Shown: one piece after another, positions 27,301-47,456 of the stretch | Position numbering within the stretch: the first letter of the stretch is position 1 | Layout of the letters: every line of letters starts with the position of its first letter | Notes under the pieces: generated by a model | What the model was told of the DNA's origin: nothing | What the model saw: the letters and a program-made list of their open reading frames with translations, nothing else | The model's database searches: none | Translations under genes and position numbers: made by a program | From: Mytilus californianus | Lineage: Eukaryota | Length of the DNA: 64,000 nt | Direction of reading: 5' to 3' | Assembly (NCBI RefSeq): GCF_021869535.1 | Contig: NW_026262679.1 | Location: forward strand, 34,038,001 to 34,102,000

Positions 27301-29199
27301 AATATTACTTTATTTGAAAACTGAACGTCCTTTTTGACCATAAAGCACAACATTTACCCACTTATATCAACAAAAATTAAAATTTAGTTTGTCAACGTTT
27401 TGACAATCACTATGTGCTTCTATTATGGCAGGGATACGTCTAGAGTTCACAAAAAAAGCACGATTTTTTTTTATATGCATATTATATCTTTGTTTGTATC
27501 ATTTTTATTTAAACCTCTTAATGTTATTTGTCCACCAAACAGCGAGGTAGGTAACTGGTATCTGATTTTCGGAACTCTATTGGTTAGATATTACGGCTTC
27601 TTTAGTGCCAGAAAAGTAATTTCATACTTGATATTTATGACACTTGAAGAAGTAAAAATTTTCAAAATATCCTTTTGATGATAACTTGTTTAACGTTCTT
27701 AGTGACTGATTTGATAGGATAGACAGTACTAAAACCGACAATTTATCATTATTTTTTTTATTATGAACACTTATTCAATCTTATCTTCATTTTTACCGTT
27801 TACATATTTTCCCATGTTAAATGTAATATTTGTTGCAGGGTTTAATACAACCGAAGATAATTTCGTAATTATTTCGTTTTAGTTTTTTATGTCATTTTTG
27901 TTTTTATTTCCATCTACTTTGTTTTAAAGATTTGATTTAAAGATTGTAAATTAAATACTTATTTTATTGGATTCTCAGTTACTAGTATGAGTTTGGTGCT
28001 CACTTTATTTAGATTGCAATTCATATCTTATTTACTGTACCCAAGGGACTTTCGTTATTTGTCGTTATTTTGCCATGGCGTTGTCAGTTTGTCTTCAACT
28101 AATGAGTTTGGCTATTCCACGGTATCTTCCGCCTCTTGTTCCTGTTCAACATATTATTTGTTGGCTAAAACAACGTACAGGTCTTTAATTGGAATTTGGT
28201 GATGTATTATATTCGATATGCTTTTTAAAAAGTTTCTATAATAACACAATTTTCAAAGACTAAAACATATGACACATTTAAGGTAGGATTATTAATTGAA
28301 TTTTACGTTTAATTTATGTAATTATCGCATTCCTCTTCCTTTTTAGTTTGTCAATACTTTGTTTTAAAGTGTTTTTCTTTTTTGCTTGTGATTGATCAAT
28401 TTGTTTTAAAATGTCGTTTTACATATTTCTGTTTGTGATAAATAACATGATTATATTTAACTTTCGGTCACATCTACTAGATTTACAGATCTAATTACAA
28501 CTCATAAACAAACACTCCTGTTCTCACTGTGTCTAAACTACCCCGGCAAAAAATGTTTGGACTCGATGGTATCTAATATCCGGCACGGTGACGGAACATC
28601 AAAAGACAGAGAAAAGGTAGTTTTCTGTTTATTTATTTGTTATTTTTATGATATCGAAGAATATATATACATATATAACTATTTTCTATTGTGAGATATA
28701 ATATTTTCTAAAACCGTTCTAAAGTAACGGAGAAATAAGTAAAAATGCACGTCAAAATGACGAATTGAGTGAACCTTGCCTCGAATTTGTTTAATTTCTC
28801 CTTAAAATATTCACATGGTACGGAAAGAAAGGTACGGACAGAAAGATATTGACATGGAATTGCAAAACTAGTCACTTTGAGCACCTCAATCCTTGTATTT
28901 TTGCGTATGGAACTAAAGAAGTAGGTCATGTCAAAATGGAAGCACCCGGTTTTGTCAATGTTGTTTACTACACAACGACCCGGTTTTGTCTATGTATAGA
29001 ACCCGGTTTTGTTTATTTTATGAAAAATAACGTTAACACTGGTACCCTGAAACAAAAAAATAAATTAACAAATAGCTGATCATGTGGGTTTTCAAACTAG
29101 ATTTCTCAATAAAGCGTGTGGCCTAGTTTAATTAAATTGTTAAAGAGTAGAACATTTTTGTAAGATAATTGGCAAAAACGCAAAGAAATGGTAAAAATC

Positions 29200-29675
29200 G
29201 TAATTAAAGGTCAATAATTCTTTCAAGGATATCGACCAAGTCGACTTATTCGTATATATTGTCTTGCTGATCATTTTTGCTATATAACTTTTTTATATTT
29301 CAAGATAATAGACAGAAATGGAAAAAAGGAGAAATTTGTCATTCAAGGACATTAACTTCTATAAGAATTCGTGTGAGAATTTTGATGTGTATGGACAAAA
29401 GGTAGAGCTCAACATTATGAACATATCAGCCCCTGCTAAATTTTCTCTATCTATAGCTGTTTTCAAATAATAGACAAAACTTGCATCCCCCTATGTTCTA
29501 TTTTAAGCCATGTCGGCCATCTTTGTTGACAAGCTGGGGTCATCAAAAACTTTTTAAACTAGATGCCCCAATGATGAGGAGAAGTGTATGTAAAATATTA
29601 ACGGAAGACGACGGACGACAGGGGCCAAGTGATGAAAAAAGCTCACTTTTCCCTTGGGGTCAGGTGAGCTAAAAC
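29200..29675 (+). repeat. Unclassified repeat nested in the TIR element (GACGACGGACGAC...GGTCAGGTGAGCTAAAA end)
   Basis: The terminus resembles an abundant bivalve non-autonomous element (recall only). Confidence 0.5.
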
Positions 29676-29954
29676 CAACCAAGAATTCCAAACAAGATTG
29701 CACCGTTCTTGAATTAAAAAAAAGTCTAACATTTCATAATTAAGGCTTACACGAACGAAATAATATAATCAGACATGGCAAAACAACTTCAATTGCGTTT
29801 TTTTAACAAAAATAAATACTACGTATTATTTATACAGGAGTGACTGAACGCACTGACAAGTCGCGACTGCTGGAATGGTCGTTATCGATATTATTTTGAA
29901 GGTCTGCAAGATAAATAATTTAATAAAACTATCTCATAAAATTAACATTGTTCA

Positions 29955-30400
29955 TGGAACCATAAAAAAAGTCAAGGTCTGATGAAACCTGCCAGACAGA
30001 CATGAACACATTACAATCATTAAAACCAACCAAAAAAAAACTTAACATTTACAAATTAATCAAGAAAATAAGTTCAAGGTCACTTAAATAGTCATGTGCG
30101 CCAGACGAGCAAATATAGTTGACCTATTACTTATGGTATTAGAGATACGGAATACGAAATGTTAACCTTGATCATAGATATCAACCATTATCAGCTATTC
30201 ATTTTGTTAGGAAATCGCTGAACCATGAAAATTAGGTCAAGGGCAATGGACATATGACAGATAGAAACATCGTTACATAACAGATCTGTGTTCGAGGTAT
30301 GTTGCAGTCAGGCCTTCTAACTTCTGACATATGAGGCTTCATACAAATTGTTCAAGCCGCCACGAATTTGCATCCCTTGGTCTCGCATTCCGACAAATCC
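29955..30400 (+). repeat. Unclassified repeat with recurring AACCAT...GGTCAAGG subunits, nested in the TIR element
   Basis: GTCAAGGTC / GTTCAAGGTC / GGTCAAGGGC recur at ~29970, ~30075 and ~30235. Confidence 0.45.
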
Positions 30401-33400
30401 AAAATATCAATGTGAATTTTTAGAAAAACATGATAACCCTACTCACATACATACAATTTCGCAGGTGTCCCTGCTTTCTTATTTCTTATAAAATTTTAAG
30501 TTGGTATACGATTTACTTATATCACATCAGTGGCGAATACAGGCGGCGTATAGGTCACACGCCCCCACCCGACCTTTGATGGCCCCAAAAAATTAAATTT
30601 TTTTTTTTACGATTTTTTTTAGCATAATTCGTGTAAACCATTGTTCGCTTCGCTACGTTCTGTGGTATGTAAGCTGTTTGAACTACGCCCGGTTTGAAAA
30701 AACCAGAATCCGTTCCTATATATTGTCAATAATATATTGACCAACGTCAATGTACGATAAACATAACACAACGGAGAGATAACAGAACCGTTTATTTATA
30801 CAACCATTAATAAACTAATCATTATTGCATTTTCTCGATGGCCTGAGACTATTATAATACTAATTTATACTTAGTATTATAGTTACAATTCGGGATAGAT
30901 ATATTTGATTTTTAATGCATGATTATTGTAATACTTTTCTCACCATAAACATTCTTTTTCTATGGCGATTCTGCAAGCATATATACATTTGTTTGATTAT
31001 CATGCCTCATAATGAACATTTAGCCTTAAGAAGATTTATTTTAAACGGTCATAGGAAATACTACACCCCTAGGTAGATTGGATTACTTATAAAGATAACC
31101 ATCCTGTTGTGCAAGAAAATCACATATCAAATGTGCGTCCTTCAATTTTTAAGACCATGAACTCTAATTTTAAGTTAAACACTAAAATTTACATAATTCA
31201 TACAACAACAAAAAACGTATAGAGAGCTTAAAACTCTATTTGCGGTTTAACCTTTATCTATCTATTTCGCAGTTAGAGTATTTTTTTTTTTTGCAAAGTA
31301 AAAATATAATTATGTTTGTTCCAATAAAGTAGGAATTCAAGTGTTTACAGATTCAAATAAATAACAGGTTGTCCTCTGTAAGAAATCGTTTTCCAACCAG
31401 CCACCAAACTCCTTTTAATTGCTGAAGTTCAATTATGTTATGCGATTATGCATTTTTTTCTTTGACAAAACCGGGTTCTGCCTTGTGAAATCTAGGACAA
31501 AACCGGATTGTACACATTGACAAAACCGGGTGCTTACATTTTGACATGACCCATTTCTTTCGTTCTATACGCAGAAATACAAATATTGAGGTGCTCAAAG
31601 TGACTAGTTTTGCAATCTCCATGTCAATATCTTTCTTTCCGTACCTTTCTGTCCGTACCATGTGAACAATTTAAGGAGAAATTAAACAAATTCGAGGCAA
31701 GGTTCACTCAATTCGTCATTTTGACGTGCATTTTTACTTATTTCTCTGTTAATCTAGAACGGTTGTAGAAAATATTACATATCACAATAGAAAACAGTTA
31801 TATATGTATAAATATTCTTCGATATCATAACAATAACAAATAAACAGAAAACTACCTTTTCTCTGTCTATTGATGTTCCGTCACCGTGCCGGATATTAGA
31901 TACCATCGAGTCCAAACATTTTTTGCCGGGGTAGTCTAGACACATTGGTTCTGATTAATGACATTTAGACCAAAACCGTCTATAAACTTATAAGTCTTTC
32001 CGGGTTGAGGACTTTACAGGCTACACCAGTGCCGATGAGCTTGTTTAAACCCTTCAATGTTATTCAATTTGAACATGATTCATTCAATTTTTATTTTAAC
32101 CATAAACGTATTTTCCCATGCTTATTTTGACATCCATGACAGGGTTTACAGTTCATTACACGTTTTTTGTTGAATTGAATTTTACATATTCGTTTATTTT
32201 AATTTTAAGATTTGATTAACATTTTGAATTTTGAAATTAATGTCAATTAATATTAATTATGAGTTTTAAGGTCGGCTTAAGTATTGAATGCTTCTTTTAT
32301 AATTTTATTGAAAAAATGTTGATAGAAGCACATTTTGTATGAAGCGCGGAAATGTTACTTTTATTGCATATTTTGTGTATTTAGAGTCTTTTTTTGTTGT
32401 AGAATATTCTTTTTTATTGTAAATCAAAACAGCAACTGAATCTTGTGACCGCCGACATTTATCAGTTATTTCATCGACATGCAAAAACGCGACTATTGTC
32501 ACACGCAGTTTCCTTCGAGTAAAAGGGATTATATTTATTCATTATTCCATAAGTGAATATAGTAAAAATGTATTAACAAATATACCGAACTGCAAGGTAA
32601 ATTGGAAAAGGGGGAAGTTCATAAAACCTTAAAATTGAATAAACTGATACACAACGTCAGCATTTAGAATATATTACTCAAGACCATCCAGCATTATTTA
32701 GGTTCTTTCCGATGAACGTTTTGAGACTAAAGGCGAAACGTTCTTCGACAAAACCCTTGCGATTTATTTATCCGATGACGGTTTACACAGACTGAGTAGC
32801 TGAAAGCTCTTGAATTTCGTATGAGAAACGTACACTACGTACACGGGGGAATATTATTGCCAAGGTGAGGATAATTAATAATTTCAAAATTGAAATCGTC
32901 TAGTCTGAGCTTTTGATTTTGTCATTTTATAAGGGACTTTCCGTTTTGAATTTTCCTCGGAGTTCGGTATTTTTGTTATTTTACCTTTTGCTATAGATTT
33001 AAGTACTGAAATGACCACTGTATTCAAATTCGATGTATGTTTTAAAATGAGGCAGAGGAATCTGTATCTGTGGTTTCTTAAATAACTAGTTCTGGAGGAT
33101 ATTTATGGGACCCGATCAGAAAGGTTTAGAATCTTAATGGAAAGACCACTATCAATATATGGAATTAAATTTAGTTATAATGATATCAATATTAATAATA
33201 ATGATTATAAAAAAAAAAGAAACAGAGGAATAATAAAATGTCACCAGAGTTCGGGGTGAAATGGAACTAATAGTATTAGTTGTAAAGATTATAAATATGT
33301 AAATTCAGAACAAGAAGAATAAAAACAGGAAGAGATGAAGAAGAACTAAGTAAAATCAATAGTTCTTATTACTTTGTCAGGGAAAACTTATCATTACTTA

Positions 33401-45058: not shown

Positions 45059-47456
45059 TGTGTGTGAACATTATATATATGATGATATATTTTCTGTTCC
45101 TTTTGTACTAAAAGTCCTCGTGGATTCATGGGTTTATACATCCTTGGCATTCAAATTCTTTGTTTTGAATGTTCCTGACGATGGCAAATCCAAAATGTTT
45201 TTCGCACGCACAGAATTTTCATTTGCTCTAAAGGAGTAAAGCCAGTAACGTCAAACGGCCCTGTGAAGGTGTATTTTATTAACTTCATTTGTTTGATTAA
45301 ATCTTACGTGTACTTTTGCTAACTGTAAAAAAAAAAAAAACCCAAAGGATATGGGGTATCCATTCATGACACTAAATAAGTACATGCACAGCAAACAACA
45401 CACACAAAAAGCAAAGGAAAAGCGCTTTGATTGCTGTTCTTCATCTCAAAGTCATAACACGAAGCAAAAAAAAAAAAAACCCTCAAAAGCTCTAACCTCA
45501 CTGCACGTTTAAGACGGCCCCTAGCACCGGGTTGATCGGAATTCTCTGCAAAATGATTGGGATAGACTTTGTAAGATGTATTCTTTTTCAAATATTTAAC
45601 AAGAAAAATTCTATATCTCCTTCATTTATTATAAATGTATAAGCCTGAAATAGGAATAAATTTCGTTTTAGTTCTTTTTTTCTAGAAATTTGTTACCATT
45701 TTTGTCTTAATTTTACTATTTCATATGTTGTGCCTACCTTTGACCATTACAAAATTTGGTTGAAATGAATGGATGTGGTATAGAAAGAATATTTCAGAAA
45801 ATATATTTGTGAAAAAAACTCATCATAGATATGTCAGCTAAGGGTAGCGATACTGTTTTTTATTTATTGAAAACAAAAATTTTCCAAAATTATTCTTAAA
45901 ATCAGGTTTTTAAGAAATTCATGTACATTTATGACATCAGAAATACATCACTAATGACACAATCGGTGGAAATATCCTCTTTAACTTAAACATGTTAAAC
46001 ATGTGGACATTCTAACGTATGTTTTTATCAAATTTTCATAATACTATCGCAGTAAAAAAAAATCATATTTTAGGGCCAAATGATGAGTTAATGAATAAAA
46101 ATTCTGAAACATCAATGAGCTTTTTTTCACCTTTAACCCTGTTTGCCGAATGTTTGATTATTCAATCCTCTAGACACGTAAACATAATATATTCGAATTC
46201 ATTTTCGATAATCAAACACAGCACTAAAAATTGTCCATTGAACCACAATATATATAACTTAAAAAACTTTACATCTCCGTCTAATGACTATCACAATCAC
46301 ATTTTTCATTACAACTGTTTGATCGATACATGTACAAAGGATTTTCAATGTTTATCATTAAGTGCAGCTACAATACTGAAATGTCAGAGAGCATATTTGG
46401 TTTTAAAAAGGAGCATGGAAAGGTAAAATGTACTTCGCAGGCAGATTAATGCACTTTAAAAAACATAGACACTGATTGTTGATGATTGCATCGAAATCGA
46501 AATCTGACGTCATAATCTAAACTATGCGGAATGTGATTGGTTAGAACGTTTTGTCGACGTCAAGTTTGAGTTTGTCACAAACAGCTAATCGGGCACCTTG
46601 TCATGATAGACAAACCAACAAAATCACGTCGAAAGAAGGATGTTGCTCATATTTTGAAGTAAGTTTGTTTAAAATTATTATAGCCTATTATTACCGATGT
46701 TTGTCGATTTTCATTTCATTGAAGATTGCATTCCGATTAATCATATCTTCATTGACTATTGGATAAGTTTGAATGTGAGACATTTTGAAGAATAGATATG
46801 GGTTCAAGAGTTTTAAAAAGGGAGTACATCAACAAGGCAATGTAAGGGATGAAACTTGTAATAAGTCCGAGCACCCTGCCAGCATTCCTTCCTATTCGCC
46901 TTTGATGCATGTCATGATTCGAATTTTATGCTGGAGGAAAACCCTAGACATAGCTATTCAGTAAATTGTGAGCATGAACGTTCATATTTCACATGAAAAA
47001 GTACTTCTTTAGATGTTTATTTCATTAGATAACATATTAGAAAGCAAAGAAAGGAAATATTTCAAAATATATGCATGCATGGCACTGTGCATGCAATCAT
47101 ACTACTGGCTTGCCTGAATATAAATAAATTGCATAGTCAGGCACATAAGATGTTAAAATAAAAATAACTATTATTTATTAAGGCCATTATTAAAAAAAAT
47201 AATCTTAATTATGGTTTTACATTTAATAGTCATCATACTATCATTTTAATTCATCCCTGTATCGTACATTGTACAGTTTAATTGATTTCATTTAGTCTAT
47301 TTTAGTATAAATGTTATTCTATAGATTAATGTTTATTAGTAATAAATATTGATTAACTATCAAAATTTGTATCTAAAGTCTCTCAGTTTTAATTATATTT
47401 CTTTGCATAAATCTTTTTCACATTTTGACAAGTCTCACTTAAGAATATACATGTAA

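What the first reader, a model, noticed from the sequence alone, without database searches (positions are those of the whole stretch)
28520..31952. Transib/RAG-like transposon: RSS-heptamer-type terminus, 5-bp TSD, unusually long TIRs
Seen: the element starts CACTGTG; the right end read inward is CAATGTG; GTTCT is duplicated exactly on both sides; TIRs are ~435 bp and >90% identical. Known: CAC-starting TIRs (CACWRTG) plus 5-bp TSDs define Transib and ProtoRAG/RAG-like transposons, relatives of the V(D)J recombinase. RAG-like elements are reported in some molluscs, and their TIRs are usually tens of bp. Inference: this is a fairly recent non-autonomous derivative of a Transib/RAG-like family with atypically long TIRs, so a partner transposase may exist elsewhere in the genome. 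An A-rich tract (GCAAAAAAT) starts 14 bp after the heptamer, loosely like an RSS nonamer.
Basis: partly seen in the sequence, partly recalled or inferred. Interest (0 to 1): 0.75.

Follow-up and report, generated by a model that had tools for sequence, protein, structure and literature searches.

The report
Gene-less Transib-type transposon copy in mussel
This is one ordinary, gene-less copy of a several-hundred-copy cut-and-paste transposon family in a mussel genome; its CAC...GTG ends and 5-base target duplication fit the Transib group (relatives of the antibody-gene enzyme RAG1), but the enzyme that moves it was not found.

Summary
The element spans 28525-31947 (3423 bp), with 437-bp inverted ends that are 93% alike, a CACTGTG start, and GTTCT duplicated on both sides.

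It belongs to a homogeneous family of about 3.5 kb:
- 559 exact 17-base termini in the 1.65-Gb genome, against 0 in the control.
- 20 of 22 paired copies have an exact 5-bp duplication.
- All other ends read CACTGTG. This copy's right end (CAATGTG) has a private change in the third C of the CAC, which is needed for cutting, so it is probably immobile.
- Neither the copies nor their majority sequence hold a frame longer than 77 codons, and there is no RNA gene. The family is non-autonomous.
- Insertions favour AT-rich c|WWNWW|g sites, unlike the GC-rich targets of insect Transib.

The ends do not fit the protostome RAG-like consensus, so this is "Transib-type", not "RAG-like". Long ends are not new for Transib; Hztransib is described with long TIRs.

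The enzyme was not identified. Membership therefore rests on ends and duplication only.

The scan had already found and followed up this family on other DNA of this genome (s1-307219, s1-335351), with the same verdict. Low interest.

The parts
28520..28524 (.). left copy of the 5-bp target site duplication GTTCT
   Evidence: the only exact flank repeat length is 5
28525..28961 (+). left terminal inverted repeat (437 bp), starting with heptamer CACTGTG (28525-28531) and holding the A-rich tract GCAAAAAAT (28546-28554)
   Evidence: same terminus in 30 of 31 termini tabulated
28817..28845 (+). 14-bp tandem duplication GGTACGGAAAGAAA x2 inside the TIR (mirror copy at 31631-31659)
28941..29019 (+). 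three direct subterminal repeats ACCCGGTTTTGT at the inner edge of the left arm; possible protein-binding sites (inferred)
   Evidence: (family D4)
28962..31513 (.). non-coding internal region, conserved over its full length among family copies. Segments 29467-29663 and 29861-30254 are also parts of far more abundant repeats
   Evidence: (table 2)
31453..31531 (-). three subterminal repeats (ACAAAACCGGGT on the + strand), the mirror image of those at 28941-29019
   Evidence: I4, I12, I13
31514..31947 (-). right terminal inverted repeat (434 bp). Its terminal heptamer reads CAATGTG inward (31941-31947): position 3 is A where all other copies have C
31948..31952 (.). right copy of the 5-bp target site duplication GTTCT

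Best explanation
This is a non-autonomous cut-and-paste DNA transposon copy from a family of about 3.5 kb and several hundred copies. A DDE transposase encoded elsewhere moves the family, most likely one of the Transib superfamily (RAG1-fold, CMCT clade).

Inferred mechanism: the enzyme binds the long inverted ends, cuts exactly at the CAC termini, and joins the ends to target DNA with a 5-bp stagger. Gap repair then produces the 5-bp duplication. It prefers AT-rich pentamers in a palindromic c|WWNWW|g context.

This particular copy is an old, fixed or high-frequency insertion. Its right terminus has lost the CAC, so it probably can no longer be excised.

Shown here: family, termini, TSD length, target bias, lack of coding capacity. 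Inferred: the identity of the enzyme, hairpin chemistry, and the immobility of this copy.
For: Termini and copy number:
- 30 of 31 tabulated termini start CACTGTG, with unrelated flanks.
- The 31-mer terminus with at most 1 mismatch occurs 298 + 262 times and the exact 17-mer 286 + 273 times; controls give 0.

TSD: 20 of 22 pairs have an exact 5-bp flank repeat.

Family structure:
- Whole-length conservation among copies; median spacing of paired termini is 3529 bp.
- Mean pairwise K2P distance is 5%, and copies are 1.8-4.8% from the majority.

Non-coding: the longest open frame is 76 codons in this copy and 77 in the majority sequence. No Rfam or tRNA hit.

Target: the TSD is 16% GC against 33% in the outer flanks, and C is enriched at position -6 (19 of 49).

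Literature:
- A 5-bp TSD plus CAC heptamer is the Transib/RAG signature, and hAT ends have G at position 3 (PMC1131882).
- The CMCT clade has CA..TG ends and 2-5 bp TSDs (PMC12730594).
- Hztransib has long TIRs and a 5-bp TSD (PMC1852546).
- CAC is vital for cleavage (PMC7204232).
Against: - No transposase was linked to the family. Pfam RAG1 (PF12940) found nothing in the genome: the best hit was 15.5 bits at E = 2.7. That search is weak here, and a Transib transposase is reported to give no InterPro domain hit at all.
- A survey of bivalve genomes found only one Transib-type DDE element (PMC10294476).
- Targets are AT-rich, whereas insect Transib and RAG prefer GC-rich sites.
- TSD length and termini vary even within Transib, so they are supportive rather than defining.
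- One pair shows a 6-bp repeat and one shows none.
Confidence: 0.65

Rival explanations
1. The family is moved by another, possibly undescribed, RAG1-fold lineage of the CMCT clade rather than by canonical Transib. One candidate is the mussel elements that pair a RAG1-fold transposase with a chromodomain gene; another is a CACTA/Chapaev-like lineage that makes 5-bp TSDs.
For: - CACTG... ends, long TIRs and subterminal repeats are also typical of CACTA-type elements.
- CMCT lineages share CA..TG ends and make 2-5 bp TSDs.
- Canonical Transib DDE genes are nearly absent from bivalve surveys.
- Earlier scan notes report several RAG1-fold transposases in this genome (untested here).
- The AT-rich target differs from classical Transib.
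Against: - Described CMC lineages make 2-4 bp TSDs. 5 bp is the classical mark of Transib.
- No link between those enzymes and these ends was tested.
Confidence: 0.2
2. It is a hAT5-type element: a hAT lineage that makes 5-bp TSDs.
For: [quoted passage not shown]
Against: The third terminal base of hAT ends is always G, not C (PMC1131882). Here CAC is invariant in the family.
Confidence: 0.07
3. It is a non-autonomous derivative of a RAG-like (RAG1L-RAG2L) transposon.
For: RAGL transposons with CAC ends and 5-bp TSDs, and a few non-autonomous derivatives, are reported in bivalves (PMC7204232).
Against: - The protostome RAGL TIR consensus CACTWMCAAACKTYKBB matches only the first four bases. The conserved AAA at positions 8-10 is TCT here.
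- PF12940, which is built on RAG1, found nothing in the genome.
Confidence: 0.04

Closest known systems
Non-autonomous Transib families (TransibN1_AG, TransibN1_DP, Hopper/Kodama) and Hztransib
   Same: CAC-starting heptamer (CACTGTG, against the consensus CACAATG and RSS CACAGTG); a precise 5-bp TSD; a palindromic target motif, as with cCASTGg for Transib-N1_AG; gene-less derivatives that outnumber autonomous copies; and long TIRs, as described for Hztransib.
   Different: - The target pentamer is AT-rich (16% GC), not GC-rich.
- The A-rich block sits 14 bases after the heptamer on both ends, so there is no 12/23 asymmetry and no 23-bp spacing.
- The element is about 3.5 kb, as long as an autonomous Transib, yet entirely non-coding.
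- No partner transposase was identified.
Protostome RAG-like (RAGL_B) transposons of oysters
   Same: CAC ends, 5-bp TSD, bivalve host.
   Different: The TIR consensus is not matched beyond CACT. No RAG1L/RAG2L genes were detected. RAGL copy numbers are low, whereas this family has hundreds of copies.
CACTA/EnSpm-Chapaev (CMC) elements
   Same: CACTG-type ends, long TIRs and subterminal direct repeats.
   Different: CMC elements make 2-4 bp TSDs. This family makes 5 bp in 20 of 22 pairs.

Membership tests
Transib superfamily | Transposase homologous to Transib TPase / RAG1 core (DDE with C2C and H3-4H motifs) | tested here: inconclusive
   The element and the family majority sequence are non-coding. 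PF12940 in the whole genome gave no hit at E <= 0.01, but the first look is insensitive. No Transib protein was available as a query, and no further genome DNA could be fetched.
Transib superfamily | 5-bp target site duplication | tested here: met
   20 of 22 paired copies have an exact 5-bp repeat; this copy has GTTCT.
Transib superfamily | Termini with an RSS-like heptamer starting CAC | tested here: met
   CACTGTG in 30 of 31 tabulated termini. It matches the RSS heptamer CACAGTG at 6 of 7 positions.
Transib superfamily | Second conserved A-rich (nonamer-like) block about 23 (or 12) bp after the heptamer | tested here: inconclusive
   The A run covers TIR positions 24-29. In a 12-bp-spacer register, nonamer positions 5-6 are AA. 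The best match to ACAAAAACC (6 of 9) is at spacer 14, and nothing fits at spacer 23. Both ends are identical. The family is too young for conservation to be informative.
Transib superfamily | [quoted passage not shown] | tested here: not met
   TSD GC is 16% against 33% in the outer flanks, from 49 distinct flanks. This is a tendency reported for insect families, not a strict criterion.
RAG-like (RAGL) transposons | Convergent RAG1L-RAG2L genes, or ends matching the RAGL TIR consensus CACTWMCAAACKTYKBB | tested here: not met
   There are no genes, and the ends match only CACT.
hAT (hAT5 subgroup) | Terminal third base G (YAG ends) | tested here: not met
   The third base is C in the family. 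The rule is taken from PMC1131882.
CMC (CACTA/Mirage/Chapaev) | 2-4 bp TSD | tested here: not met
   5 bp in 20 of 22 pairs.

The most novel reading that the evidence does not exclude
Mussels carry hundreds to thousands of CAC-ended, 5-bp-TSD, long-TIR elements, yet bivalve surveys find almost no canonical Transib transposase. The family may therefore be driven by an undescribed RAG1-fold transposase lineage, for example the one earlier scan notes found paired with a chromodomain gene. That lineage would have an AT-rich target preference and would recognise the ends symmetrically.
Probability: 0.2. Interest if true: 0.6.

Novelty: new member of a known kind. Interest (0 to 1): 0.22.

Why it matters
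On its own, very little. It is one decayed copy of a common repeat, useful mainly for repeat annotation of Mytilus genomes.

The family would matter only if its enzyme were found. It offers several hundred clean substrates: defined ends, a 5-bp TSD and a palindromic AT-rich target. These could be used to study how a Transib/RAG1-type enzyme in a lophotrochozoan recognises ends without 12/23 asymmetry. They could also help explain why such elements abound where canonical Transib genes seem rare.

Tried and rejected
- Pfam RAG1 (PF12940) against the whole genome at E <= 0.01 and E <= 10. Only a 15.5-bit noise hit at C24:20389467-20389652. This says little, because the first look found a single candidate and Transib transposases can lack any domain hit.
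- Looking for an autonomous copy by fetching 10 kb inward from 20 termini. All partners lay 1.8-5.9 kb away and were non-coding. Long frames in those loci were LINE reverse transcriptase/endonuclease outside the elements, plus a capsid-like gene in a nested insertion. I did not try to fetch more by another tool, so the 22.2-kb pair on C2 stayed unread.
- Empty-site test. Only contigs were available. Junction-spanning contigs are present in X1 (possibly the source individual; both junctions), X3 (right junction) and X20 (right junction). No joint skipping the element was among those listed. This shows presence, not absence of an empty allele. 'Organism D' differs from the window no more than a second individual of organism A does, so it is not good evidence for an orthologous insertion in another species.
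- RNA genes, tRNAs and tandem repeats inside the element: none of note.
- A coding remnant in the majority sequence: none; the longest open frame is 77 codons.
- Earlier scan notes were searched for the enzyme's ends: no details.
Full report
**1.
The sequence shows GTTCT at 28520-28524, then CACTGTG at 28525. At the other side it shows CACATTG at 31941-31947, followed by GTTCT at 31948-31952. The repeat finder and a pairwise alignment give inverted arms at 28525-28961 and 31514-31947. They are 93.4% identical over 438 columns, with two small indels. Past about 437 bp the likeness becomes patchy. It is carried on by three ACCCGGTTTTGT repeats at the inner edge of each arm (28941-29019 and 31453-31531). 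A 14-bp tandem duplication also lies inside each arm. GCAAAAAAT starts exactly 14 bases after the heptamer.

**2. It is one copy of a large, uniform family.**
The genome is 1.65 Gb in 175 contigs. Earlier scan notes call it a Mytilus mussel, one of them the California mussel; I did not verify the species. The left arm finds 1238 first-look candidates, and the best 40 are all 95-97% identical over the full 437 bp.
- The 31-base terminus with at most one mismatch occurs 298 + 262 times.
- The exact 17-base terminus occurs 286 + 273 times.
- The reversed control gives zero in both cases.
- Of 31 termini tabulated, 30 begin CACTGTG, and the flanks are unrelated apart from one duplicated locus pair (L018/L030).

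I fetched 10 kb inward from 20 termini and found the partner end for most. Twenty of 22 pairs have an exact 5-bp flank repeat as the longest one. One pair has 6 bp (TTAAAT) and one has none (L043's true terminus is two bases outside the BLAST start).

Copies are conserved over their whole length. The median spacing of 26 inverted terminus pairs read from the coordinate list is 3529 bp. Fourteen full-length copies differ by a mean K2P distance of 5.0% and lie 1.8-4.8% from their majority sequence. The window copy is at 3.0%. Those 14 were chosen as the best matches to this copy, so the family as a whole may be older. The two arms of the majority sequence are themselves only 94% alike over about 490 bp. 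The arm-to-arm difference is therefore largely inherited and is not a clock.

**3. The family is non-coding.**
The longest ORF in this copy is 76 codons. The longest open frame in the majority sequence is 77 codons. There is no Rfam or tRNA match. Contig depth shows that two internal segments (29467-29663 and 29861-30254) also belong to much more abundant repeats (table 2). The interior therefore looks like a patchwork rather than a deleted gene.

**4.
- Every other right end reads CACAGTG on the + strand, which is CACTGTG inward. This copy's CAATGTG is a private C-to-A change at position 3 of the heptamer. CAC is the part of RSS and RAGL ends that is vital for cleavage (PMC7204232). I infer that this copy can no longer be excised at that end.
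- The target is not random. Over 49 distinct flanks the pentamer is 16% GC against 33% further out. Positions -5, -4, -2 and -1 are almost always A or T, and C is enriched at -6 (19 of 49). This gives a palindromic c|WWNWW|g site. Palindromic pentamer targets are known for Transib families (cCASTGg), but those families and RAG prefer GC-rich DNA (PMC1131882).

**5. Which superfamily?**
Kapitonov and Jurka defined Transib by a 5-bp TSD and a 38-bp end: a CACAATG heptamer, a 23-bp spacer and an A-rich nonamer.
- The heptamer criterion and the TSD criterion are met here.
- The A-rich block is present but sits at spacer 12-14, not 23, and identically on both ends. With a family this young, conservation says nothing.
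- The protostome RAG-like consensus CACTWMCAAACKTYKBB fits only at CACT, so 'RAG-like' is not supported.
- hAT5 elements also make 5-bp TSDs, but hAT ends have G at position 3.
- CMC elements share CA..TG ends, long TIRs and subterminal repeats, but make 2-4 bp TSDs.
- Long TIRs are not foreign to Transib: Hztransib is described with long TIRs and a 5-bp TSD.

The signature therefore points to Transib, or at least to the CMCT clade. A 2026 preprint shows that TSD length and end sequence vary inside Transib, and that classification should rest on the transposase.

**6. The transposase was not found.**
Pfam RAG1 (PF12940) found nothing in the genome. That result carries little weight: the first look produced one candidate, the control genomes cannot ring, and a bona fide Transib transposase is reported to give no InterPro hit. 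I had no tool-given Transib protein to use as a query. Candidate long pairs could therefore not be read, above all C2:17274260-17296498, with 22.2 kb between inverted termini. A survey of bivalve genomes found a single Transib-type DDE element (PMC10294476). This keeps open that another RAG1-fold lineage drives these elements. Earlier scan notes report several such enzymes in this genome, including one paired with a chromodomain gene. I did not test that link.

**7. Population evidence.**
Only contigs of public runs were on hand. Contigs span the left junction (28081-28550) and the right junction (31915-32115) in X1, which may be the source individual. They span the right junction in X3, another individual of the same organism label, and in X20 (organism D), whose flanks differ no more than X3's do. 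No joint that skips the element was listed. The insertion is therefore shared wherever it can be seen, and the empty-site test gave no positive result. The family's words are very abundant in all four runs, including organism B, whose flanks are about 6% diverged. The family is thus not confined to one species.

**8. Verdict.**
The feature is real and was accurately described, but it is ordinary: a decayed, gene-less copy of a high-copy Transib-type family. The scan has already flagged this family many times on other DNA of this genome and followed it up twice with the same conclusion (s1-307219, s1-335351).
- the genome-wide TSD tally;
- the AT-rich palindromic target;
- the private CAC-to-CAA defect of this copy;
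- the mismatch to the RAGL consensus;
- named candidates for the search for the autonomous partner.

Noticed in passing
L035:2759-10000 (G000:C24:51583468-51613491): One family copy is split. Likeness to the family stops at L035:2758, and the partner terminus lies 30 kb away. The inserted DNA holds broken frames, one of which matches the Pfam double jelly roll-like capsid domain (PF21738, E = 2e-39), so it is a Polinton/Maverick-like insertion of about 26.5 kb. Observed only.
   Followed up: partly
G000:C2:17274260-17296498: Two inverted family termini lie 22.2 kb apart. This is either a copy with a large nested insertion or a long, possibly gene-bearing relative.
   Followed up: no
G000:C1:135911303-135911779: Two inverted termini lie only 477 bp apart: a miniature foldback-like derivative of the family.
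   Followed up: no
L018 (C165:50765496-50768932) and L030 (C121:89579910-89583346): The two loci are 99.6% identical over all 3.4 kb, including 1.5 kb of flank that holds a roughly 113-bp tandem array, although they lie on different contigs. This is a recent segmental duplication or an assembly duplicate.
   Followed up: partly
L039:1112-4623: A LINE-like pair of frames lies next to a family copy. One frame has a PHD finger ahead of the endonuclease domain (PHD E = 5e-5, just under Pfam's cut-off), followed by a reverse transcriptase.
   Followed up: no
window 27891-28284 and 32816-33012: The flanks of the element hold other very abundant repeats. The second is the most abundant stretch of the 5.9 kb that was laid.
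   Followed up: no
window 1-64000: The only ORF of 110 codons or more in the whole 64-kb window is 46019-46426 (135 aa). GC is 31.4%. The region is gene-poor and repeat-rich.
   Followed up: no
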